Source of the DNA: Auanema rhodensis
Taxonomy: Eukaryota; Animalia; Nematoda
Direction of reading: 5' to 3'
Assembly: GCA_964057225.1 (NCBI GenBank)
Contig: OZ059896.1
Location: 9,362,001-9,426,000 of the forward strand
DNA: 64,000 bases
This document shows positions 24,929 through 64,000 of this stretch, in pieces. Every line of letters starts with the position of its first letter. The stretch's first letter is position 1. The notes under the pieces were generated by a model. The model did no database searches and had not been told where the DNA came from. It saw nothing but the letters and a program-made list of their open reading frames with translations. Both the position numbers and the translations under genes were made by a program.

Positions 24929-25878
24929 ATGGATTTGGAAGGTAGAATCAAAGCTTACCGTTTCGTAGCTTACGCTGCAGTCACTTTTTCTGTTGTGGCT
25001 GTGCTCTCAGTATGCGTTACTCTTCCAATGGTTTACAACTATGTCAGCCACGTCAAGCATCAGCTCAACCATGAAATCAGCTATTGCAAGGTAAATATTT
25101 CTCAATATCTTACATTAATATCATTTCATTCCAGGGATCTGCCAAGGACATCTGGACTGAGGTCAACGAATTAAGAAAGCTCCCAACCGCTAACCGTACT
25201 GCCCGTCAAGCTGGTTACGGAGATGCTGGAGTTGATGGAGGAGCTTCTGAATCTAGTGGCCAATGTGAAGGATGCTGCTTGCCAGGACCAGCTGGACCAG
25301 CTGGAACCCCAGGAAAGCCAGGAAGACCAGGAAAGCCAGGAGCTCCAGGACTCCCAGGAAACCCAGGAAAGCCACCACAACAACCATGTGAACCAATGAC
25401 TCCACCACCATGCAAACCTTGCCCAGCTGGACCAGCAGGACCACCAGGACCACCAGGACAACCAGGAGATGCTGGAACTCCAGGACAACCAGGACAACCA
25501 GGACAAGATGCCGCTCCAGGACAACCAGGACCAAAGGGACCAACTGGACCAGCTGGAAATCCAGGAGCCCCAGGAGCCCCAGGAGCCCCAGGACAAGACG
25601 CTGTCTCTGAGCCAATTCTCCCAGGAGAGCCAGGACCACAAGGAACCCCAGGACCACAAGGACCACCAGGACAGCCAGGAGCCCCAGGACAAGACGGAGC
25701 CCCAGGAGCCCCAGGACCAAAGGGACCAAACGGACAACCAGGACAACCAGGAGCCGATGGAAACCCAGGAGCCCCAGGACCAGCTGGACCTCCAGGATCT
25801 GCTGGAGAAAAGGGAATCTGCCCCAAGTACTGCGCTATCGATGGAGGTGTCTTCTTCGAGGACGGAACTCGCCGCTAA
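24929..25878 (+). CDS. Nematode cuticle collagen, 2 exons (intron 25091-25134)
   Basis: Col_cuticle_N ([30 protein letters not shown]), RTAR furin site, CEGCCLPGP, Gly-X-Y repeats, C-terminal [19 protein letters not shown]. Confidence 0.98.
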
Positions 25879-47480: not shown

Positions 47481-50400
47481 ATGGTGGTACAACAGGAATA
47501 TGATTTGAAGAAAGCCCAGAAAAATTTTGCTAACAATGTTAGGTAAGTTGTTGTCTTTATTGTATATAAATTTGTTTATGTTTTCGAATGAAAAATATTC
47601 CTCCGGCTAAAAAAGTTCGTACTCGAAATGCGAAAAATCCGTTCGTCCTTGTATGTTTTTAAATATTATTTTATATGTAAAGTAATTTTTAGTTTCGGTA
47701 TGCTAGTATAACTGATATTGTGTGTTATATATTTGGTATAGCTACATCATTAGTATCAGGCTTAGGATATCCATTGATGTCTATAATTATGGTTTTTATT
47801 TTTTTTACAAAATGATATTGACAATGTTTTTAGGGAAACATAACACAAGCTTTCATGGATATTACTGAAGGATTAGGTTAATAAGCTAGTAATTAACTTC
47901 GAAAGTTAAATATATCATTCTTTAGATTCGAATCAATTCAGTATCGATGTTAAAAGAGACTGCATTAAGTTTGCTGTGTTAGGCGCAGTTATATTTGCTT
48001 GTGGATTTTTACAAGTTGTTTCACGAAACCGAATAACTTATCATATATTCTATTTAGTCAGTTTTTCTGGTGAAAGCATGTGATAATGTTATTACCAATT
48101 GGAGAAAAAGGTTTTTTATGTCATTATTACGACAAGATATCGCCTGGTATGATAGCACCCATAGCGGATCTTTAGCTCCAAAACTTTTCGAGTAGACAAC
48201 GGTTTTACATAACAAAATATATTGACACAATTACAGCAATCTTGAGAGAATCAGAGAAGGTAGTGGGGACAAAATTGGTCTGTTGTTTCAGTTCTTAGCT
48301 CAGGTACAAAGAAAAATTTATTTCACTGTATGTTACATACATATATAGTTTGGAGGTGGCTTTGTAGTTGCTTTATCACACGATTGGAAGCTAACTCTCA
48401 TTATGATGTCATTATCACCGTTTATAATGATATCCGGAAGTTATGTTGCCACGGTTTAAAAATAAATCCATTGTGGTTTAAACTTCAATATTTCTGTCAG
48501 ATCATGGCATCCATGGCTCAAGATGAGTCAAAGATATACGAAAAAGCTGGTGGCATTGTTGATGAGGTTCTCAGTTCTATAACAACAGTTCAATCATTTA
48601 ATGGTCAAACGTATGAAATACAAAGGTAGAAATTCTCTATAATTGGTATGAAAGTGTGTACATATAGGTATGAAAAGTCGTTAGAGCAAGGAAGAAAGTT
48701 GGGAATTCGTAAAGCTTTATCAACCGGAGTTGGTATTGGATTCACATTCTTGTTTATGTTTACTTCTTATGCATTAGCATTTTGGATCGGAATTAATTAT
48801 GCTGCCAATGGAACTATTGATGGAGGAACTATCATAATAGTAATATTGGATACATACTTATATCATTTTTTCTTAAAAAAACATCGTTTTGGGTATTTTT
48901 TTCTGTCATGATGGGTGCAATGGCTCTTGGCCAGCTTGGACCTCAATTTGCTGTAGTTGGGGCAGCTGTAGGCGCAGCGACTTCATTGATAGAAATTATT
49001 GAACGAGTATATAGTGATATTATCACATAAGTTATTTAATGATCATTTGTTCAGGTACCAGTAATAGATTCCTTTAGTGCAAAAGGCAAACGTCTTGTTA
49101 GTTTAAAAGGACACATCAAACTTTGCAATGTTTATTTTTCTTATCCAAGCAGACCTGATGTTCCAATTTTAAAGGTATTACATATGAATATTAGGTTGTT
49201 GAACATGAAATAATCTTAGGGAATATCATTGGAAGCAATTCCTGGCCAAACAATTGCTTTAGTTGGCCCAAGTGGTTGTGGCAAAAGTACAATAACTCAA
49301 CTAATTCTTCGATATTATGAACAGATTCATGGAGAAGTGACATATTCAAACGTTGTTGAGAGTTAATAGGCACTGCTGTTTCAGATCAAAATTGATGATT
49401 ATGAAATATCGGATTTGAATATAGAATATTTGAGAACATGTGTTGGAATTGTATCTCAGGAACCTAATTTGTTTAACACAACTATTGAAGAAGTTCATTG
49501 GAAAATGATATTCTCTTGATTATTCGTTCATTTTTAGAATATAAGATATGGTTGTCCTGCAGTTTCTAATTCCGACATAGTTAAAGCTTTAAAAGAAGCA
49601 AATGCTTATGATTTTGTTATGAAGTTTCCTCGCGGTCTTCAAACATTGGTTGGCAATCGTGGAGCTCAACTATCTGGTGGACAGAAACAAAGAATTGCAA
49701 TTGCTAGAGCTCTTGTTAGAAATCCCAAGGTTCAGCAATCAACCGAGAAACATAATTCCGAAAAATCTCAAAAATATTTTATTTGTAGGTGTTATTACTG
49801 GATGAGGCAACAAGTGCATTGGATGCGGAAAGTGAATATATTGTTCAAAAAGCTTTGGAAAATGTGATTAAACTTTCAAATGATTAAACGATTAGGAAAT
49901 TACAGGCTTCCAAAGGGAGAACTACTTTTGTAATAGCTCATAGATTATCAACTATACGTAATGCTAATAGTATCATTGTTATGAACTCTGGAGAAGTTAT
50001 TTTTATTTTTTTAATGTTAAAAATATAAGATTATTTAGATTGTTGAACAGGGAACACATACTGAACTCATGAATTTGAAAGGTTTATATCATAATCTTGT
50101 TAGTAATCAAGTTCTTGCTGATGTGAAACAAGGTAAAACACGTTTTATGAAATTTTCGTTTGATTTTTACGAGCAACATTATTTCAGAAAACATATGTGA
50201 AGATAATGAGAATGAAAAACAACGGGATAATGATATAGAAAGCTTGGTAAGTTATAGTAGTTGTATTATGATAAATACTTAATGAAGTAATTATCAGACT
50301 TCAAATATACAACCTCTACATTCGAATAAAAAACATTCACAATACAATCAAGGACAAGTATCAAAATTAAGAACAGAAAACCTTCTAAGTATAATTAGAA

Positions 50401-52677
50401 AAAGTCGCCCAGAATGGCTTTATTTGATTGTGGCTTTTCTTTCTGCTTCAACACAAGGATGCGTTTTCCCAGCTTTTGCTTGGATATTTGTTCAAATTAT
50501 ACAGGTATAAGATAACATGAGATCTGTATTTTAAAGTATTTTCAAGACATTCACAGAACCTCCAGAACAAATGAAGTGTGATGGCCATTTTTGGGCTGTA
50601 ATGTTTCTAACTTTGGGAGGCTTAATGTTTGTTACGATGATTATTCAAGTAAGTACATATATTTACGTATTTATCAATTTTCAATATTCAAAATCTTATT
50701 AAAGTTTTAAAGACGTTCTTCTTTGGATTAGCTGCCGAATCTATGAGTAAACGTTTTCGTATAATGGTTTTTGAAAATATTCTTCGGATGGACAAATCAT
50801 ACTTTGATAAACCTGAGAATTCACCAGGAAAATTATCAACTCATCTAGCTACAGATGCACCATGCTTGAAATCAGTATTCTTAAATTTTTTAAATTAAAC
50901 TAAGTTTTAAATAGGCTATAGATTTTCGTTTGGGTACAGCTTTTGGAGCTTTAATAGGATTGGTGGTTGGAATTGGAATTGCCTTTTATTATGGATGGCA
51001 AATGGCTTTATTAGTATAAAAAAGTGAAATTTTTAAAATTTAATTCACAAATACTACAGGCAGTATTAATGTCTCCTTTGACCATTATTGGACAATCAAT
51101 TCAAATGCAATATACATTAGGAGCAATGGGAGGAAAGACATCAGATATGGTGGAAAGTGGAAAGGTTTGTAAAATATAGAATTTTATAAATTTTATTAAC
51201 AAAAAGATAATTAGATTGCTGTAGAAGCAATCGAAAATATTCGAACTGTTCATTCATTGACATTAGAACGTAAACTCTATGACGACTTTACAACTTTACT
51301 ATCACGAGCAAAAAAAAATATATTACGTCAAGCAGTTTCACAGGTATTTATAACTGAAAAAAATATATTTTTCTTATTAATATCATTTATGTAGGGTTTA
51401 GCATATGGTTTTGCTGTAAGTGTGTTTTTTTTCTTATTTGCTTCATGCTTTCGATTTGGATTATGGCTCATTGAAAATAATTATATGTATCCTTTTCCAG
51501 TGTTAAAGTATAAAATATTCTTATAAAATGTTTGATTCATGAAATTTCAGTGTTCTATTTGCAATTTCATTTACTACAGGAGGTCTCGGAATATTTAGTG
51601 GATACTTTCCTGAATACATGAAGGCAGTAATAGCTGCTGGAAAAATTTTCTCTATGCTAGAAGAAGAAACAGTTATAGATGGATTATCAGAAGAAGGAGG
51701 AAAGATGAATAAATTTGGTGATATAGTTATATCAAATCTACGATTCAGTTATCCACAAAGACCAACTGTTCCCATCCTCAAAGGAATTGATTTGAAAGTA
51801 GTTTTCATGAAAATTTTAAAAGAATACTATTTATGGTTTTTTAGTTAAAAAAAGGTCAAACTGTTGCATTTGTTGGTCCAAGTGGTTGTGGGAAATCAAC
51901 TATAATCACTTTACTTGAACGAAATTATAAAGTAGATGATGGCAGTATTGTATGTTTAAGTACAGCATATTCGAAAGAAAATTTAATTTTTAAGGAAATC
52001 GATGGAGTAAATGTTGAAAAAATTAACACAAAGCACATTCGAAATCATATCGCTTTAGTTTCTCAGGAGCCGGTCCTTTTCGATAGGTCGATTAGCGAAA
52101 ATATAACATATGGAGTTTCTGAATATGTAAAACATGAATTGATTGAAGAAGCTTGTCGAGAAGCTAATATTCATGAATTCATAACTTCTTTACCTCAAGT
52201 TTGTTATATATTTTATTTAAAATATGACTATATTTAGGGATATGATACGAGAGTAGGTGAAAAAGGAGTTCTATTATCAGGTGGTCAAAAGCAACGTATT
52301 GCTATAGCTCGAGCATTGGTAAGGAATCCGTCAGTTCTATTATTAGATGAAGCAACAAGTGCTTTGGACAGTGAATCAGAGAAAGTAATATTCAGAAAAA
52401 TGTATTGTGATGTATTCAAAAAGATAAATATTTCAGATTGTTCAAGAAGCTCTCGACAAAGCTGCAACTGGTAGAACGTGTATTGTTATTGCTCATCGAC
52501 TGTCTACGATACAAAACGCCGATTATATTATAGTTTTTTCAAATGGAAATATTATCGAACGAGGTAATCATGTCGTTAATGTGACTAAAAACTGGAACAA
52601 CTTTAGGAACACATGACGAATTACTTCAGAAAAGAGGAATGTATTATGATTTAGCTTTAAAACAATCTGGAAACTAA
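47481..52677 (+). CDS. ABCB1-type P-glycoprotein (pgp family full transporter)
   Basis: Two TMD-NBD halves; Walker [10 protein letters not shown] (twice), signature [19 protein letters not shown] (twice), [18 protein letters not shown]. Confidence 0.95.
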
Positions 52678-56226: not shown

Positions 56227-57646
56227 TTATTCCTTTTTATCTGTTCCCTGTTTCCCATGAGTGTCCTAGAAATATGATTATTTAACAGTTGCTAATGAAA
56301 AAAACCAACACTATCATCTGTTGGCACATCTATATAAAATATTGGAGAAACAGCATTCTGAGAATCCTTAATAAAGATGAATGAATTTCTATTGAATAGT
56401 ATTAATTACTTTTGGATCAACGTATTCATCTAGAACATCATCCATAGAGGAAGCGGATATTGCTCTGAATATTTGAAAATGAATATAGAAAAATAAAAAA
56501 AAATAGGAACCTATTGAGATTAGGGATTAATGTGCTTTCATCTTGATCCATAATTTCAACTTCACTATCAGTTGTAAAATCAAACTTTGAAACTAAACAG
56601 AAGAGGGGAGACTAAAATTTTATCAATATTTAAAAACCTTGCTTAATATTTTCCTCTGATGTTTCGACAAGATCAAATGTTATTTCAGGAACTGACCTCA
56701 TAACTGATCCAGATAAATGTTGATCAGCTATGAATGGAGGTAGTTTTTTAGGTTCCTAAACAAAAATCATATATGGATCTATAAGCGCCGGTTAAAAGCA
56801 GATTAAGTTAACTGATACTACTAACGGCTGGAAGAAGTTCATTAGGGGATTTTCCCATGTGAATTTGTAACAATTGTTCAACTTTTGCATTCATAAGTCG
56901 CAAATATTCCATTTCTTCTTTCTAAATATCAATAAAATACATAATAAACAACTAATAAACTTACATGACGATATTCCATGATTTGCATTTTTAGCTCCAT
57001 TTCTCGAATATCAGTTTGCACTTTATCTTCCGTACTTGAGAGATTGTTTACTCTAAATCAATAAGTATATATACATATATAATTTATAAAATACCGTCTT
57101 AAAATGATATCTGTTCGTTCAGAAGTTCTTAAAATACGTTCTTCATTACTACTTTGTTTTCTCATGTCACGCTCTCTTTCCATATCTTCAACACTTTCTT
57201 CCTCAAACGAATGAATTCTTTCGACCTCTTCCTCTGTTAGAAACAACTCTGAACCATATAACTGAACACCATCAGAACATCATAAATCTGAGAACTACTC
57301 ACTAAGAGAAGCATCCAGTAAATGACGACGATCATTGAAATGTTCCCGAACCAGTATCCATTTCGCTACCCAATAAATATGATAAATAAGAGTGAAAGGT
57401 GGAGGAATAGCTGGTGTTGATTCATATTCCATAACCTAGAAAAACTGAACCACTAATATCAAAGAACAATGAAAAAAACTTGTCTATAACGTTCAAAAAG
57501 CCAAATTTCTTGAGTAATTTCGACATTTCTTTCGAAAATATATGTACAGCAAGCAACCATGGTATTCATCAATAACACATTCGCTATGATCATAAAAATT
57601 GTCATGAATATAGGAACAACGAAATAACCAGGCACACAAGTATCTC
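56227..57646 (-). CDS. TRPM cation channel, 3' exons only (S6, TRP box, coiled coil); gon-2/gtl family, probably gtl-1-like
   Basis: GDTCVPGYF..PIFMTIFMIIANVLLMN.MVA, TRP box EIWLFERY, VMEYESTPAIPPPF, LFLTEEEVERIHSFEEE. The exon starts mid-gene at acceptor TTTAG (57647-57651); upstream exons lie outside the window. Confidence 0.9.
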
Positions 57647-57850
57647 CTAAATATGACAAATATTAGTATGTGATAAAGAGAGGGAATTAAAACAAAGAAT
57701 TGAATTGTAATTAATTTCACAAAATTTTCATTCAAAATCATTAGAGTACCGTGTCACTGTATGTTTTATCGATAAACTACACTTTTTCTATTGACCACTA
57801 GTTTGTTGGAGCCCAATTGATCTGGCGCCATGTATGCTAGCACATCATAA

Positions 57851-57923
57851 GGTCTTGTGGTGTAGTGGTTATCACGTCTGCTTTACACGCAGAAGGTCGT
57901 CGGTTCGAACCCGGCCAAGACCT
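57851..57923 (+). tRNA. tRNA-Val(TAC), first of 26 TAC copies in the array
   Basis: Acceptor GGTCTTG/CAAGACC, A box TGGTGTAGTGG, anticodon arm TCTGC-TT[TAC]AC-GCAGA, B box GGTTCGAACCC, TTTT terminator about 5 nt downstream. Confidence 0.97.
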
Positions 57924-59128
57924 GTTCTTTTGAAGGATTTTAGTCCAAAATCATTAGAGTACCATGTCACTGTATGTTTTATCGATAAACTACACTTTTT
58001 CTATTGACCACTAGTTTGTTGGAGCCCAATTGATCTGGCGCCATGTATGCTAGCACATCATAAGGTCTTGTGGTGTAGTGGTTATCACGTCTGCTTTACA
58101 CGCAGAAGGTCGTCGGTTCGAACCCGGCCAAGACCTGTTCTTTTGAAGGATTTTAGTCCAAAATCATTAGAGTACCATGTCACTGTATGTTTTATCGATA
58201 AACTACACTTTTTCTATTGACCACTAGTTTGTTGGAGCCCAATTGATCTGGCGCCATGTATGCTAGCACACCATAAGGTCTTGTGGTGTAGTGGTTATCA
58301 CGTCTGCTTTACACGCAGAAGGTCGTCGGTTCGAACCCGGCCAAGACCTGTTCTTTTGAAGGATTTTAATCCAAAATCAGCAGAGTACCGTGTCACTGTA
58401 TGTTTTATCGATAAACTACACTTTTCCTATTGACCACTAGTTTGTTGGAGTCCAATTCATCTGGCGCCATGTATGCTAGCACATCATAAGGTCTTGTGGT
58501 GTAGTGGTTATCACGTCTGCTTTACACGCAGAAGGTCGTCGGTTCGAACCCGGCCAAGACCTGTTCTTTTGAAGGATTTTAATCCAAAATCATCAGAGTA
58601 CCGTGTCACTGTATGTTTTATCGATAAACTTCATTTTTCCTATTGACCACTAGTTTGTTGGAGTCCAATTCATCTGGCGCCATGTATGCTAGCACATCAT
58701 AAGGTCTTGTGGTGTAGTGGTTATCACGTCTGCTTTACACGCAGAAGGTCGTCGGTTCGAACCCGGCCAAGACCTGTTCTTTTGAAGGATTTTAATCCAA
58801 AATCATCAGAGTACCGTGTCACTGTATGTTTTATCGATAAACTTCATTTTTCCTATTGACCACTAGTTTGTTGGAGTCCAATTCATCTGGCGCCATGTAT
58901 GCTAGCACATCATAAGGTCTTGTGGTGTAGTGGTTATCACGTCTGCTTTACACGCAGAAGGTCGTCGGTTCGAACCCGGCCAAGACCTGTTCTTTTGAAG
59001 GATTTTAATCCAAAATCATTAGAGTACCGTGTCACTGTATGTTTTATCGATAAACTTCATTTTTCCTATTGACCACTAGTTTGTTGGAGCCCAATTGATC
59101 TGGCGCCATGTATGCTAGCACATCATAA

Positions 59129-59201
59129 GGTCTTTTGGTGTAGTGGTTATCACGTCTGCTTTACACGCAGAAGGTCGTCGGTTCGAACCCGGCCAAGACC
59201 T
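59129..59201 (+). tRNA. tRNA-Val(TAC) variant G7>T with acceptor-stem mismatch (copy 7; repeated at 62537-62609)
   Basis: GGTCTTTTGG instead of GGTCTTGTGG. Confidence 0.85.
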
Positions 59202-60619
59202 GTGCTTTTGAAGGATTTTAGTCCAAAATCATTAGAGTACCGTGTCACTGTATGTTTTATCGATAAACTACACTTTTCCTATTGACCACTAGTTTGTTGG
59301 AGTCCAATTCATCTGGCGCCATGTATGCTAGCACATCATAAGGTCTTGTGGTGTAGTGGTTATCACGTCTGCTTTACACGCAGAAGGTCGTCGGTTCGAA
59401 CCCGGCCAAGACCTGTGCTTTTGAAGGATTTTAGTCCAAAATCATAAGAGTACCGTCTCACTGTATGTTTTATCGATAAACTACATTTTTCCTATTGTAC
59501 ACTAGTTTGTTGGAGCCCAATTGATCTGGCGCCATGTATGCTAGCACATCATAAGGTCTTGTGGTGTAGTGGTTATCACGTCTGCTTTACACGCAGAAGG
59601 TCGTCGGTTCGAACCCGGCCAAGACCTGTTCTTTTGAAGGATTTTAATCCAAAATCATCAGAGTACCGTGTCACTGTATGTTTTATCGATAAACTACATT
59701 TTTCCTATTGACCACTAGTTTGTTGGAGCCCAATTGATCCGGCGCCATGTATGCTAGCACATCATAAGGTCTTGTGGTGTAGTGGTTATCACGTCTGCTT
59801 TACACGCAGAAGGTCGTCGGTTCGAACCCGGCCAAGACCTGTTCTTTTGAAGGATTTTAATCCAAAATCATCACAGTACCGTGTCACTGTATGTTTTATC
59901 GATAAACTACACTTTTCCTATTGACCACTAGTTTGTTGGAGCCCAATTGATCTGGCGCCATGTATGCTACCACATCATAAGGTCTTGTGGTGTAGTGGTT
60001 ATCACGTCTGCTTTACACGCAGAAGGTCGTCGGTTCGAACCCGGCCAAGACCTGTTCTTTTGAAGGAATTTAATCCAAAATCATTAGAATACCGTGTCAC
60101 TGTATGTTTTATCGATAAACTACATTTTTCCTATTGACCACTAGTTTGTTGGAGCCCAATTGATCCGGCGCCATGTATGCTAGCACATCATAAGGTCTTG
60201 TGGTGTAGTGGTTATCACGTCTGCTTTACACGCAGAAGGTCGTCGGTTCGAACCCGGCCAAGACCTGTTCTTTTGAAGGATTTTAATCCAAAATCATCAG
60301 AGTACCGTGTCACTGTATGTTTTATCGATAAACTACATTTTTCCTATTGACCACTAGTTTGTTGGAGCCCAATTGATCTGGCGCCATGTATGCTAGGAGA
60401 TCATAAGGTCTTGTGGTGTAGTGGTTATCACGTCTGCTTTACACGCAGAAGGTCGTCGGTTCGAACCCGGCCAAGACCTGTTCTTTTGAAGGATTTTAAT
60501 CCAAAATCATAAGAGTACCGTCTCACTGTATGTTTTATCGATAAACTACACTTTTCCTATTGACCACTAGTTTGTTGGAGTCCAATTCATCTGACGCCAC
60601 GTTTGCTAGCACATCATAA

Positions 60620-60692
60620 GGTCTTGTGGTGTAGTGGTTATCACGTCTGCTTCACACGCAGAAGGTCGCCGGTTCGAACCCGGCCAAGACCT
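60620..60692 (+). tRNA. tRNA-Val(CAC), copy 14
   Basis: TCTGC-TT[CAC]AC-GCAGA with T-stem GCCGG/CCGGC. Confidence 0.95.
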
Positions 60693-60832
60693 GTGCTTTT
60701 GAAGGATTTTAGTCCAAAATCATTAGAGTACCGTGTCACTGTATGTTTTATCGATAAACTACACTTTTCCTATTGACCACTAGTTTGTTGGAGTCCAATT
60801 CATCTGGCGCCACGTTTGCTAGCACATCATAA

Positions 60833-60905
60833 GGTCTTGTGGTGTAGTGGTTATCACGTCTGCTTCACACGCAGAAGGTCGCCGGTTCGAACCCGGCCAA
60901 GACCT
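60833..60905 (+). tRNA. tRNA-Val(CAC), copy 15
   Basis: TCTGC-TT[CAC]AC-GCAGA with T-stem GCCGG/CCGGC. Confidence 0.95.
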
Positions 60906-61897
60906 GTGCTTTTGAAGGATTTTAGTCCAAAATCATAAGAGTACCGTCTCACTGTATGTTTTATCGATAAACTAAATTTTTCCTATTGTACACTAGTTTG
61001 TTGGAGCCCAATTGATCTGGCGCCATGTATGCTACCACATTATAAGGTCTTGTGGTGTAGTGGTTATCACGTCTGCTTTACACGCAGAAGGTCGTCGGTT
61101 CGAACCCGGCCAAGACCTGTTCTTTTGAAGGATTTTAATCCAAAATCATAAGAGTACCGTCTCACTGTATGTTTTATCGATAAACTACATTTTTCCTATT
61201 GAACACTAGTTTGTTGGAGCCCAATTGATCTGGCGCCATGTATGCTAGGACATCATAAGGTCTTGTGGTGTAGTGGTTATCACGTCTGCTTTACACGCAG
61301 AAGGTCGTCGGTTCGAACCCGGCCAAGACCTGTTCTTTTGAAGGATTTTAATCCAAAATCATCAGAGTACCGTGTCACTGTATGTTTTATCGATAAACTA
61401 CATTTTTCCTATTGAACACTAGTTTGTTGGAGCCCAATTGATCTGGCGCCATGTATGCTAGCACGTCATAAGGTCTTGTGGTGTAGTGGTTATCACATCT
61501 GCTTTACACGCAGAAGGTCGTCGGTTCGAACCCGGCCAAGACCTGTTCTTTTGAAGGATTTTAATCCAAAATCATCACAGTACCGTGTCACTGTATGTTT
61601 TATCGATAAACTACATTTTTCCTATTGAACACTAGTTTGTTGGAGCCCAATTGATCTGGCGCCATGTATGCTAGCACGTCATAAGGTCTTGTGGTGTAGT
61701 GGTTATCACGTCTGCTTTACACGCAGAAGGTCGTCGGTTCGAACCCGGCCAAGACCTGTTCTTTTGAAGGATTTTAATCCAAAATCATCACAGTACCGTG
61801 TCACTGTATGTTTTATCGATAAATTACACTTTTCCTATTGACCACTAGTTTGTTGGAGCCCAATTGATCTGGCGCCATGTATGCTACCACATCATAA

Positions 61898-61970
61898 GGT
61901 CTTGTGGTGTAGTGGTTATCACGTCTGCTTCACACGCAGAAGGTCGCCGGTTCGAACCCGGCCAAGACCT
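61898..61970 (+). tRNA. tRNA-Val(CAC), copy 20
   Basis: TCTGC-TT[CAC]AC-GCAGA with T-stem GCCGG/CCGGC. Confidence 0.95.
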
Positions 61971-64000
61971 GTTCTTTTGAAAGATTTTAATCCAAAATCA
62001 TTACAGTACCGTGTCACTGTATGTTTTATCGATAAACTTCATTTTTCCTATTGACCACTAGTTTGTTGGAGTCCAATTCATCTGGCGCCATGTATGCTAG
62101 CACATCATAAGGTCTTGTGGTGTAGTGGTTATCACGTCTGCTTTACACGCAGAAGGTCGTCGGTTCGAACCCGGCCAAGACCTGTTCTTTTGAAGGATTT
62201 TAATCCAAAATCATCAGAGTACCGTGTCACTGTATGTTTTATCGATAAACTTCATTTTTCCTATTGACCACTAGTTTGTTGGAGTCCAATTCATCTGGCG
62301 CCATGTATGCTAGCACATCATAAGGTCTTGTGGTGTAGTGGTTATCACGTCTGCTTTACACGCAGAAGGTCGTCGGTTCGAACCCGGCCAAGACCTGTTC
62401 TTTTGAAGGATTTTAATCCAAAATCATTAGAGTACCGTGTCACTGTATGTTTTATCGATAAACTTCATTTTTCCTATTGACCACTAGTTTGTTGGAGCCC
62501 AATTGATCTGGCGCCATGTATGCTAGCACATCATAAGGTCTTTTGGTGTAGTGGTTATCACGTCTGCTTTACACGCAGAAGGTCGTCGGTTCGAACCCGG
62601 CCAAGACCTGTGCTTTTGAAGGATTTTAGTCCAAAATCATTAGAGTACCGTGTCACTGTATGTTTTATCGATAAACTACACTTTTCCTATTGACCACTAG
62701 TTTGTTGGAGTCCAATTCATCTGGCGCCATGTATGCTAGCACATCATAAGGTCTTGTGGTGTAGTGGTTATCACGTCTGCTTTACACGCAGAAGGTCGTC
62801 GGTTCGAACCCGGCCAAGACCTGTGCTTTTGAAGGATTTTAGTCCAAAATCATAAGAGTACCGTCTCACTGTATGTTTTATCGATAAACTACATTTTTCC
62901 TATTGTACACTAGTTTGTTGGAGCCCAATTGATCTGGCGCCATGTATGCTAGCACATCATAAGGTCTTGTGGTGTAGTGGTTATCACGTCTGCTTTACAC
63001 GCAGAAGGTCGTCGGTTCGAACCCGGCCAAGACCTGTTCTTTTGAAGGATTTTAATCCAAAATCATCAGAGTACCGTGTCACTGTATGTTTTATCGATAA
63101 ACTACATTTTTCCTATTGACCACTAGTTTGTTGGAGCCCAATTGATCCGGCGCCATGTATGCTAGCACATCATAAGGTCTTGTGGTGTAGTGGTTATCAC
63201 GTCTGCTTTACACGCAGAAGGTCGTCGGTTCGAACCCGGCCAAGACCTGTTCTTTTGAAGGATTTTAATCCAAAATCATCACAGTACCGTGTCACTGTAT
63301 GTTTTATCGATAAACTACACTTTTCCTATTGACCACTAGTTTGTTGGAGCCCAATTGATCTGGCGCCATGTATGCTACCACATCATAAGGTCTTGTGGTG
63401 TAGTGGTTATCACGTCTGCTTTACACGCAGAAGGTCGTCGGTTCGAACCCGGCCAAGACCTGTTCTTTTGAAGGAATTTAATCCAAAATCATTAGAATAC
63501 CGTGTCACTGTATGTTTTATCGATAAACTACATTTTTCCTATTGACCACTAGTTTGTTGGAGCCCAATTGATCCGGCGCCATGTATGCTAGCACATCATA
63601 AGGTCTTGTGGTGTAGTGGTTATCACGTCTGCTTTACACGCAGAAGGTCGTCGGTTCGAACCCGGCCAAGACCTGTTCTTTTGAAGGATTTTAATCCAAA
63701 ATCATCAGAGTACCGTGTCACTGTATGTTTTATCGATAAACTACATTTTTCCTATTGACCACTAGTTTGTTGGAGCCCAATTGATCTGGCGCCATGTATG
63801 CTAGGAGATCATAAGGTCTTGTGGTGTAGTGGTTATCACGTCTGCTTTACACGCAGAAGGTCGTCGGTTCGAACCCGGCCAAGACCTGTTCTTTTGAAGG
63901 ATTTTAATCCAAAATCATAAGAGTACCGTCTCACTGTATGTTTTATCGATAAACTACACTTTTCCTATTGACCACTAGTTTGTTGGAGTCCAATTCATCT

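What the first reader, a model, noticed from the sequence alone, without database searches (positions are those of the whole stretch)
57733..64000. Tandem array of at least 29 tRNA-Val genes nested antisense in an apparent TRPM channel intron
Seen: the array begins ~85 bp from the splice acceptor of an internal TRPM exon and runs more than 6.2 kb, in a genome where introns are mostly ~45 nt. Each 213-bp unit has a complete tRNA with A/B boxes and a TTTT terminator, and there are no indels. Known: C. elegans tRNA genes are mostly dispersed, and long single-tRNA arrays are known from Entamoeba and a few other taxa. Inference: recent amplification that might increase decoding of GTA codons in an AT-rich genome, act as a TFIIIC boundary or satellite, or interfere with TRPM transcription.
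Basis: partly seen in the sequence, partly recalled or inferred. Interest (0 to 1): 0.78.

Follow-up and report, generated by a model that had tools for sequence, protein, structure and literature searches.

The report
tRNA-Val gene array inside TRPM intron
One intron of a nematode TRPM ion-channel gene has grown about a thousandfold to 53 kb because it holds 249 head-to-tail valine tRNA genes, nearly all of the genome's genes for two of its three valine tRNAs; it is a striking example of a known thing, a tandem tRNA gene array.

Summary
The array starts at window 57724 and runs 47 kb past the window's end. It holds 249 tRNA-Val genes, all on the + strand and exactly 213 bp apart, with no indel or insertion.

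168 genes carry anticodon UAC and 81 carry CAC. About 90% look structurally intact. The tRNA part varies 3-4 times less than the spacer.

The TRPM reading is supported. The next TRPM exon lies 210 bp beyond the last tRNA. The exons are collinear with a Caenorhabditis TRPM and join in frame across a GT-AG intron of 53,312 nt, 99.5% of it array.

The genome's size and seven large scaffolds match the Auanema rhodense germline assembly. A 2026 preprint on it counts 19,554 tRNA genes and mentions tRNA arrays in passing.

This scan has already found other tRNA arrays in this genome (Phe, Asp, Ser, Ala, Leu, Gln, Gly). One of them was also read as lying in an intron.

New here:
- The array sits in a gene-rich arm, not in the satellite blocks that are eliminated from body cells.
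- It holds about 98% of the genome's Val(UAC) and Val(CAC) genes.
- The CAC units are a gene-conversion-like mosaic.

Verdict: a new member of a known kind. Expression of the tRNAs and of the host gene was not tested.

The parts
57724..64000 (+). First 29.5 units of the 213-bp tandem array (26 Val-UAC and 3 Val-CAC genes). The array continues outside the window to G000:C4 ~9,472,750, for 249 genes in all.
57851..57923 (+). First tRNA-Val(UAC) gene (73 nt, U73 discriminator), with A and B boxes and TTTT at +5 to +8.
60620..60692 (+). First tRNA-Val(CAC) unit. It has C34 together with C50, which turns the U50-G64 wobble pair into C-G.
57647..57723 (-). Non-repeat 3' end of the host intron (77 nt), ending in the acceptor tttag.
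57477..57646 (-). TRPM exon encoding S6 and the TRP box (DTCVPGYF...IWLFERYRQV), about 85% identical to the Ancylostoma ceylanicum relative by eye.
56965..57435 (-). The next TRPM coding stretch downstream (post-TRP helix and start of the coiled-coil region), aligned to P0004 residues 1342-1466. It includes a short intron that the alignment reads through.

Best explanation
This is a genuine tandem array of 249 RNA polymerase III genes for tRNA-Val (168 UAC, 81 CAC). It most likely grew in place from one or a few tRNA genes nested in a short intron of a TRPM channel gene, an arrangement that is common for tRNA genes in rhabditid nematodes.

Growth and upkeep are by unequal crossing-over of blocks of units and by gene conversion. 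Selection on the tRNA product keeps the coding part, its internal A and B box promoter and its T4 terminator intact while the spacer drifts.

The array holds about 98% of the genome's Val(UAC) and Val(CAC) genes, so it is probably the main source of these two tRNAs. It is one of many such arrays in the Auanema rhodense genome.

The host TRPM gene keeps an intact, conserved reading frame. To be expressed it must be transcribed by Pol II against the direction of all 249 tRNA genes and spliced across 53.3 kb.

Shown here: the structure, copy number, nesting, reduced variation in the tRNA part, and the block duplications. Inferred: Pol III activity, retention in body cells, in-place origin, and host gene expression.
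For: Structure:
- 249 genes lie at exactly 213-bp spacing (248 of 248 intervals) with no N in the sequence.
- All 249 copies of a spacer-specific 28-mer in the genome lie in this array, so there is no second copy elsewhere.

Intactness and selection:
- Rfam scores are 58-68 bits in the two stretches scored.
- 223 of 249 genes have no broken stem pair and no change at a conserved loop base. The TTTT terminator never varies.
- Variable sites: 65 of 140 in the spacer against 16 of 72 in the tRNA (Fisher p = 6e-4). Diversity is 0.047 against 0.012.

Unequal exchange:
- Units 144-165 are identical to units 166-187 (4,686 bp, no difference). Shorter block duplications exist at other lags.
- The right edge carries a decayed partial unit.

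Nesting:
- Pfam finds TRPM SLOG, TRPM2-like and ion-transport domains on minus-strand exons on both sides of the array. The best PDB matches are TRPM3 and TRPM7.
- The exons are collinear with P0004 across the array. The intron is in frame, GT-AG, and 53,312 nt long, 99.5% of it array.
- The two TRPM paralogs on C3 have at most 92 and 355 bp at the same place.

Genome context:
- 243 Val UAC/CAC anticodon arms occur in the genome, 238 in this array and 5 dispersed.
- 43% of C. elegans tRNA genes lie inside introns (PMC3342880).
- The assembly size of 180.9 Mb matches A. rhodense, for which 19,554 tRNA genes are annotated and only 215 called pseudogenes.
Against: - No expression data were available. 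Clustered tRNA genes can be silenced, as in Arabidopsis (PMC7544208), and concerted evolution can keep silent copies alike for some time.
- About 10% of the units carry a disrupting change, including an 11-unit subfamily with a G10-A25 mismatch.
- The perfect 22-unit duplication could be an assembly error.
- The lack of any indel in 53 kb is not explained by simple neutral turnover of the spacer.
- Retention in body cells is inferred only from position in a gene-rich arm.
Confidence: 0.75

Rival explanations
1. The array is mostly silent. The units are real tRNA genes packed in repressive chromatin and contribute little tRNA. The five dispersed Val(UAC/CAC) genes do the work, and the array persists as a tolerated satellite kept uniform by unequal exchange.
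For: Tandem tRNA clusters in Arabidopsis are silenced in most tissues (PMC7544208 and PMC12308677). The array behaves like a satellite, with block duplications and slight isolation by distance. About 10% of units are damaged.
Against: Variation in the tRNA part is 3-4 times lower than in the spacer, and the terminator never varies. A silent satellite does not predict this. Copy numbers of the three valine families (about 310 AAC, 171 UAC, 83 CAC) follow valine codon use in a small sample.
Confidence: 0.2
2. The array acts on its host gene. 249 head-on Pol III units in the intron block or throttle Pol II, so TRPM is expressed only where the array is quiet. Alternatively the array is a chromatin boundary.
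For: A single antisense Pol III unit in an intron lowers expression of mouse Polr3e by transcriptional interference (PMC5358760). All 249 units are antisense to TRPM. This array has no indel and no insertion, unlike the Val-AAC array, which could reflect limits set by the host intron.
Against: There is no direct evidence. The scan's notes describe many other tRNA arrays in this genome, so no host-specific role is needed to explain this one. The orientation is a single observation with a 50% prior.
Confidence: 0.1
3. The host TRPM gene is disabled by the array and is on its way to becoming a pseudogene. The two paralogs on C3 cover its function.
For: A 53-kb intron full of Pol III genes is about 1000 times the size of the other introns in this gene. 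Two TRPM paralogs exist.
Against: No stop or frameshift appears in the aligned exons over P0004 residues 96-1466. The splice sites are canonical and in phase. The S6/TRP exon and the 55-nt mini-exon next to the array are well conserved against other nematodes, even though spacer divergence shows the array is not brand new.
Confidence: 0.1
4. Assembly artefact: a misjoin, or an inflated or collapsed repeat count.
For: A perfect 4,686-bp tandem duplication is the kind of feature assemblers sometimes create. The copy number of a 53-kb repeat is hard to verify.
Against: The exons on the two sides belong to one collinear, in-frame gene. There are 125 distinct unit sequences, which give long accurate reads unique paths. 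There is no N and no second copy elsewhere in the assembly. The assembly is from HiFi reads with a contig N50 of 16.4 Mb.
Confidence: 0.04

Closest known systems
Tandem tRNA gene arrays of other eukaryotes (Entamoeba, PMC2652664; Arabidopsis chromosome 1 Pro and Ser-Tyr-Tyr clusters, PMC7544208; human 1q23.3 tRNA repeat, PMC4041453)
   Same: Head-to-tail units, each carrying intact tRNA genes. Copy number changes by unequal exchange. The gene is more uniform than the spacer.
   Different: The unit here is minimal: 213 bp with one gene. Two isoacceptors differ at two linked positions and are mixed in one array. The whole array lies inside one intron of a protein-coding gene. The period is strictly constant.
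Non-coding RNA arrays noted in the Auanema rhodense germline genome preprint (bioRxiv 10.64898/2026.08.27.747507)
   Same: Probably the same genome. The preprint counts 19,554 tRNA genes and lists tRNA, 5S and U2 arrays among tandem repeats.
   Different: The preprint mentions such arrays only among germline-restricted repeats and gives no anatomy. This array lies in a gene-rich arm of C4, at least 1.7 Mb from the nearest sampled satellite block and inside an intron. Its tRNA density (34%) exceeds the '<20% per 10 kb' stated there.
tRNA genes nested in introns in Caenorhabditis (Wang and Ruvinsky 2012, PMC3342880)
   Same: A tRNA gene lies wholly inside an intron of a protein-coding gene. 43% of C. 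elegans tRNA genes do so.
   Different: [quoted passage not shown] Here there are 249, and the intron is about 1000 times the usual length.
Antisense Pol III unit in the Polr3e intron (PMC5358760)
   Same: A Pol III transcription unit antisense within a Pol II gene's intron, a layout shown to cause transcriptional interference.
   Different: That case is a single MIR element, not 249 tRNA genes. Interference here was not tested.

Membership tests
Tandem tRNA gene array | Head-to-tail repeat units, each with a complete tRNA gene | tested here: met
   249 units at 213-bp spacing, all on the + strand
Tandem tRNA gene array | tRNA with a cloverleaf scoring above a curated threshold | tested here: met
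   The 61 units scored with Rfam RF00005 (29 in the window, 32 in L035) reach 58-68 bits against a threshold of 29. By rule-based checking, 223 of 249 have no broken stem pair and no change at a conserved loop base.
Tandem tRNA gene array | Internal A and B box promoter and a downstream T-run terminator | tested here: met
   TGGTGTAGTGG and GGTTCGAACCC are present. TTTT at +5 to +8 never varies in 249 units.
Tandem tRNA gene array | Transcription by RNA polymerase III and production of mature tRNA | not testable with these tools
   No RNA or ChIP data. Array-specific variants (A59 in UAC; the GGUCUUG acceptor in CAC) would allow the test.
Nested intronic RNA gene | Exons of one gene on both sides, collinear with a homologue, joined in frame by canonical splice sites | tested here: met
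   tblastn of P0004; GT-AG, phase 1, split codon GGA; the 55-nt mini-exon before the intron is conserved in C. auriculariae
Nested intronic RNA gene | Host transcript is actually spliced across the nested genes | not testable with these tools
   No RNA-seq available
TRPM channel (host gene) | N-terminal SLOG/MHR domains, six-helix channel domain with pore, TRP box | tested here: met
   Pfam LSDAT_euk, TRPM2 and Ion_trans hits on the exons; TRPM3/TRPM7 structures at E ~1e-19; IWLFERY TRP box shared with nematode relatives
tRNA-derived SINE or dead tRNA-derived satellite | Truncated or degenerate tRNA head joined to an unrelated body, with dispersed copies | tested here: not met
   The tRNAs are full length with an intact acceptor 3' strand. 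The spacer 28-mer is found only in this array (249 of 249).
Germline-restricted (eliminated) repeat block of A. rhodense | Lies in the terminal or central satellite blocks that are removed from body cells | tested here: not met
   Sampling of C4 shows satellite at 0.5-6.0, 12-13 and 21 Mb, and mostly non-repetitive DNA from 7.0 to 11.2 Mb (the exception is a tRNA-Met array at 8.0 Mb). The array lies at 9.42-9.47 Mb among ordinary genes. Retention itself is inferred, not measured.

The most novel reading that the evidence does not exclude
The array and its host constrain each other. Because it fills an intron that Pol II must cross head-on, TRPM transcription and tRNA-Val(UAC/CAC) transcription would be mutually exclusive or tuned to each other. 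Selection to keep the intron spliceable would then explain why this array, unlike other arrays in the genome, has no indel and no transposon in 53 kb. It would be a natural extreme test case for conflict between Pol II and Pol III.
Probability: 0.1. Interest if true: 0.75.

Novelty: new member of a known kind. Interest (0 to 1): 0.45.

Why it matters
- It puts almost all the genes for two essential tRNAs inside one intron of an ion-channel gene. This gives a natural system for asking how Pol II copes with hundreds of head-on Pol III genes, and how a 53-kb intron is spliced in a genome where introns are about 50 nt.
- It shows that the tRNA gene expansion in Auanema rhodense is not confined to germline-restricted satellite blocks. 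It also reaches gene-rich DNA that is probably kept in body cells.
- The mixed UAC/CAC make-up shows how one array can hold two isoacceptors and shift their ratio by unequal exchange.
- The array's tRNA variants differ from the dispersed genes, so its activity can be tested directly by tRNA sequencing.

Tried and rejected
- **tRNA-derived SINE or dead satellite.** Rejected: the tRNAs are full length and intact, the tRNA part varies less than the spacer, and there are no dispersed copies of the spacer.
- **A boost specific to GTA codons.** Rejected as unnecessary: Val-AAC is amplified as well (about 310 genes), and the three families roughly follow codon use. The codon sample is small.
- **Location in eliminated satellite DNA.** Rejected by sampling along C4.
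- **Random anticodon mutation as the origin of the CAC units.** Less likely than gene conversion. All three sites where the array differs from the dispersed UAC gene carry the dispersed CAC state.
- **Poly(A) and acceptor-like motifs on the TRPM-sense strand of the array.** There is no AATAAA and no TTTCAG. With one 213-bp unit repeated, this is a single observation with no statistical weight.
- **Whether the Val-AAC array on C6 is also in an intron.** Its far end lies beyond the stretch I fetched, so this is unresolved.
- **Supplementary tables of the preprint** (break-site coordinates, ncRNA lists) are not held.
Full report
**Observation.** ARAGORN finds 29 tRNA-Val genes on the + strand from 57850 to 63888, exactly 213 bp apart. 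Tandem Repeats Finder reports a single array at 57724-64000 with period 213, 29.5 copies, 97% matches and 0% indels. Rfam's tRNA model scores every copy at 58-68 bits against a threshold of 29. The sequence shows a standard 73-nt valine cloverleaf with A box TGGTGTAGTGG, B box GGTTCGAACCC and a TTTT run starting 5 nt after the tRNA. Three of the 29 genes carry anticodon CAC rather than TAC. G+C is 0.43 in the 4-kb bin that lies wholly in the array, against 0.25-0.38 in the bins outside it.

**Full extent.** The window is G000:C4:9,362,001-9,426,000. I fetched the next 90 kb and joined it to the window; below, 'ext' coordinates continue the window's numbering.
- The array continues without a break to ext 110,748 (C4 ~9,472,750).
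- It holds 249 tRNA-Val genes, and all 248 intervals are exactly 213 bp. The sequence has no N.
- 168 genes have anticodon UAC and 81 have CAC.
- A spacer-specific 28-mer occurs 249 times in the genome at up to two mismatches. The array accounts for exactly 249, so no other copy exists in the assembly.

**Which genome.** G000 has 180,911,798 bases, and matches fall on seven large contigs.
- A cuticle collagen gene and best protein matches to strongylid and rhabditid nematodes place it in the Rhabditina.
I read the 2026 preprint on A. rhodense (bioRxiv 10.64898/2026.08.27.747507).
- Its new germline assembly spans 180.9 Mb with seven chromosome scaffolds. It has 19,554 annotated tRNA genes, of which only 215 are called pseudogenes.
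- The match in size and chromosome number makes the identification very likely.
- The preprint mentions arrays of 5S rRNA, 'several' tRNA loci and U2 among germline-restricted tandem repeats. It gives no anatomy and says nothing about introns.

**Host gene and intron.** Minus-strand exons on both sides of the array belong to one TRPM gene.
- Pfam finds the TRPM SLOG domain (LSDAT_euk), the TRPM2-like domain and the ion-transport domain on separate exons.
- The pore exon matches TRPM3 and TRPM7 structures at E ~1e-19.
- In a script, a 1,666-residue TRPM of Caenorhabditis auriculariae (P0004) aligns collinearly. Residues 96-1288 match ext 116,334 down to 110,951. Residues 1287-1466 match window 57,644 down to 56,965. 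Nothing is missing at the junction.
- The exon just before the array is a 55-nt mini-exon (VWDTHVENGIPIQQMNVT), conserved in C. auriculariae (IWDTHEDQNIPINQLNVT).
- The donor is AG|gtacga at ext 110,959/110,958 and the acceptor is tttag|GA at 57,647/57,646. The intron is phase 1 with the split codon GGA.
- The intron is 53,312 nt, and 99.5% of it is array.
- Most other introns of this gene, judged from the gaps between aligned pieces, are about 40-60 nt, and a few are 150-250 nt.
- The genome has two further TRPM loci on C3. There the pore and S6 matches lie at most 92 bp and 355 bp apart.
- The S6/TRP-box exon is about 85% identical to the Ancylostoma ceylanicum relative and shares its IWLFERY motif.

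So the coding sequence looks intact.

**Do the tRNA genes look functional?** I stacked all 249 units in register; no gaps are needed.
- Nucleotide diversity is 0.047 in the 127-nt upstream spacer and 0.012 in the tRNA, leaving out position 34.
- Variable sites number 65 of 140 outside the tRNA and 16 of 72 inside it (Fisher p = 6e-4). Variants present in five or more units number 32 against 4 (p = 1e-3).
- The TTTT terminator and the two bases before the tRNA never vary.
- 138 units carry the consensus UAC gene and 64 the consensus CAC gene.
- 23 units have a broken stem pair, including an 11-unit subfamily with C25A and G26A. Three more have a change at a conserved D-loop base. About 223 of 249 therefore look intact.

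This pattern is what selection on the tRNA product predicts. A dead satellite does not predict it.

**Two isoacceptors in one array.**
- C34 (the CAC anticodon) goes with C50, which turns the U50-G64 wobble pair into C-G, in 80 of 81 CAC units. T34 goes with T50 in 165 of 168 UAC units.
- r² between positions 34 and 50 is 0.93. r² between position 34 and every common spacer variant is at most 0.08. Pairs of sites 11-20 bp apart average 0.14.
- The genome has five dispersed genes of these families.
- The array's acceptor stem (GGTCTTG/CAAGACC) is that of the dispersed UAC genes L001 and L002.
- Positions 8-65 of the array's CAC units are identical to the dispersed CAC genes L003 and L004.
- Every array unit has A59, as the dispersed CAC genes do. 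The dispersed UAC genes have T59.
- So all three sites at which the array departs from the dispersed UAC gene (34, 50, 59) carry the CAC-gene state.

I infer gene conversion between the array and CAC genes rather than three chance mutations. This would also explain why the 34/50 pair travels together on many spacer backgrounds, because homology with dispersed genes ends at the edges of the tRNA. Selection for the pair is an alternative that I cannot exclude.

**Dynamics.**
- Units 144-165 are identical, base for base, to units 166-187, a 4,686-bp tandem duplication. Shorter near-perfect block duplications exist: 11 units at lag 12, 9 at lag 16 and 8 at lag 10.
- Mean difference between units rises slowly with distance, from 6.5 to 8.2 per 213 bp.
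- After the last intact gene comes a decayed partial unit with a remnant of the tRNA 3' half.

These are marks of unequal crossing-over, with less homogenisation at the edges.

One feature is unexplained. There are 81 variable substitution sites but no length variant and no insertion in 53 kb. The Val-AAC array on C6 (period 251) has intervals of 160, 250, 254 and 280 bp and insertions of about 3.4 and 7.8 kb in the parts I saw. So the perfect regularity here is not a property of the assembly method.

**Genome context.**
- The anticodon arm of the UAC/CAC family occurs 243 times in the genome, 238 times in this array and 5 times elsewhere. Adding the 11 double-variant units, the array holds 249 of 254 genes, about 98%.
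- Val-AAC has about 310 copies, nearly all in one array on C6.
- The shares are 55% AAC, 30% UAC and 15% CAC.
- Valine codons in the TRPM exons are 58% GTT+GTC, 32% GTA and 11% GTG. In a crude sample of long open frames they are 64%, 21% and 14%.
- The agreement is suggestive only, because the samples are small. It argues for general, roughly balanced amplification and against a boost aimed at GTA.

Sampling along C4 shows the following:
- 176/351-bp satellite at 0.5-6.0 Mb;
- non-repetitive DNA at 7.0-11.2 Mb;
- satellite at 12-13 Mb;
- non-repetitive DNA at 14.5-17 Mb;
- satellite at 21 Mb.

This matches the preprint's picture of two gene-rich retained arms per autosome between eliminated blocks, with breaks only at the transitions. 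The array at 9.42-9.47 Mb lies well inside the left arm, so it is probably kept in body cells. This is an inference, since I had no read depth. One of my samples in the same arm (8.0 Mb) hit another array, of tRNA-Met genes at 192-bp spacing.

**Mechanism and rivals.**
- *Best reading.* A nested intronic tRNA-Val gene was amplified in place. Nested tRNA genes are ordinary in these nematodes: 264 of 608 C. elegans tRNA genes lie in introns (PMC3342880). The array is kept by unequal exchange, conversion and selection on the product, and it serves as the main gene pool for two valine tRNAs.
- *Silent array.* Tandem tRNA clusters are silenced in Arabidopsis (PMC7544208). This remains possible, but it fits the reduced variation in the tRNA part poorly.
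- *Role in throttling TRPM.* This has a precedent in a single antisense Pol III unit in the Polr3e intron (PMC5358760), but it is untested here.
- *Dying host gene.* Not supported by the intact, conserved exons.
- *Misassembly.* Unlikely, given collinear in-frame exons on both sides and 125 distinct unit sequences.

**Comparison and novelty.** Tandem tRNA arrays are known from Entamoeba (PMC2652664), plants and humans (PMC4041453). The expansion in this species has been counted in a preprint. Earlier notes of this scan report arrays for Phe, Asp, Ser, Ala, Leu, Gln and Gly in this genome, one of them read as intronic. I did not test those notes.

This finding is therefore a new member of a known kind. 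It has four particular points:
- the complete anatomy of a 53-kb intronic array;
- its placement in a gene-rich arm;
- its near-monopoly of two isoacceptor families;
- the mosaic origin of its CAC units.

**Limits.**
- There are no RNA, ChIP or read-depth data.
- The preprint's supplementary tables are not held.

Noticed in passing
G000:C6 ~5,769,240 to beyond 5,864,000 (L012-L030, L061-L063): A second valine array: about 300 tRNA-Val(AAC) genes on the - strand, period 251 bp. Unlike the finding, it has odd intervals (160, 250, 254, 280 bp) and insertions of about 3.4 and 7.8 kb. Its far end was not reached.
   Followed up: partly
G000:C4:8,000,001-8,003,000 (L046): Another tRNA array in the same gene-rich arm: 15 tRNA-Met(CAT) genes at about 192-bp spacing in 3 kb, with a three-unit (577 bp) higher-order period.
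   Followed up: partly
array units 144-165 and 166-187 (G000:C4 ~9,450,183-9,459,554): A perfect 4,686-bp (22-unit) tandem duplication with no difference. It is either a very recent unequal crossover or an assembly duplication.
   Followed up: partly
window 57851-57923 and loci L001-L005: All Val(UAC) and Val(CAC) genes of this genome, dispersed or in the array, have T at discriminator position 73. The Val(AAC) genes have A73. Whether this is general in nematodes was not checked.
   Followed up: no
window 48000-52500 (+): Exons of an ABC transporter that looks like a P-glycoprotein (Walker and signature motifs visible in the open frames) lie just downstream of the TRPM gene's 3' end, on the opposite strand.
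   Followed up: no
window 25084-25878 (+): A cuticle collagen gene with long Gly-X-Y repeats, which supports a nematode origin.
   Followed up: no
G000:C3:7,837,783-7,856,310 and 7,866,770-7,867,672: Three dispersed tRNA-Val(AAC) genes lie 10-30 kb from one of the two TRPM paralogs. Probably a coincidence.
   Followed up: no
G000:C4 0.5-6.0, 12-13 and 21 Mb (L040-L044, L055, L056, L059): Satellite blocks with periods of 176, 351 or 879 bp, and 167 bp at 20% G+C in the central block. This fits the terminal and central eliminated repeat blocks described for A. rhodense.
   Followed up: partly
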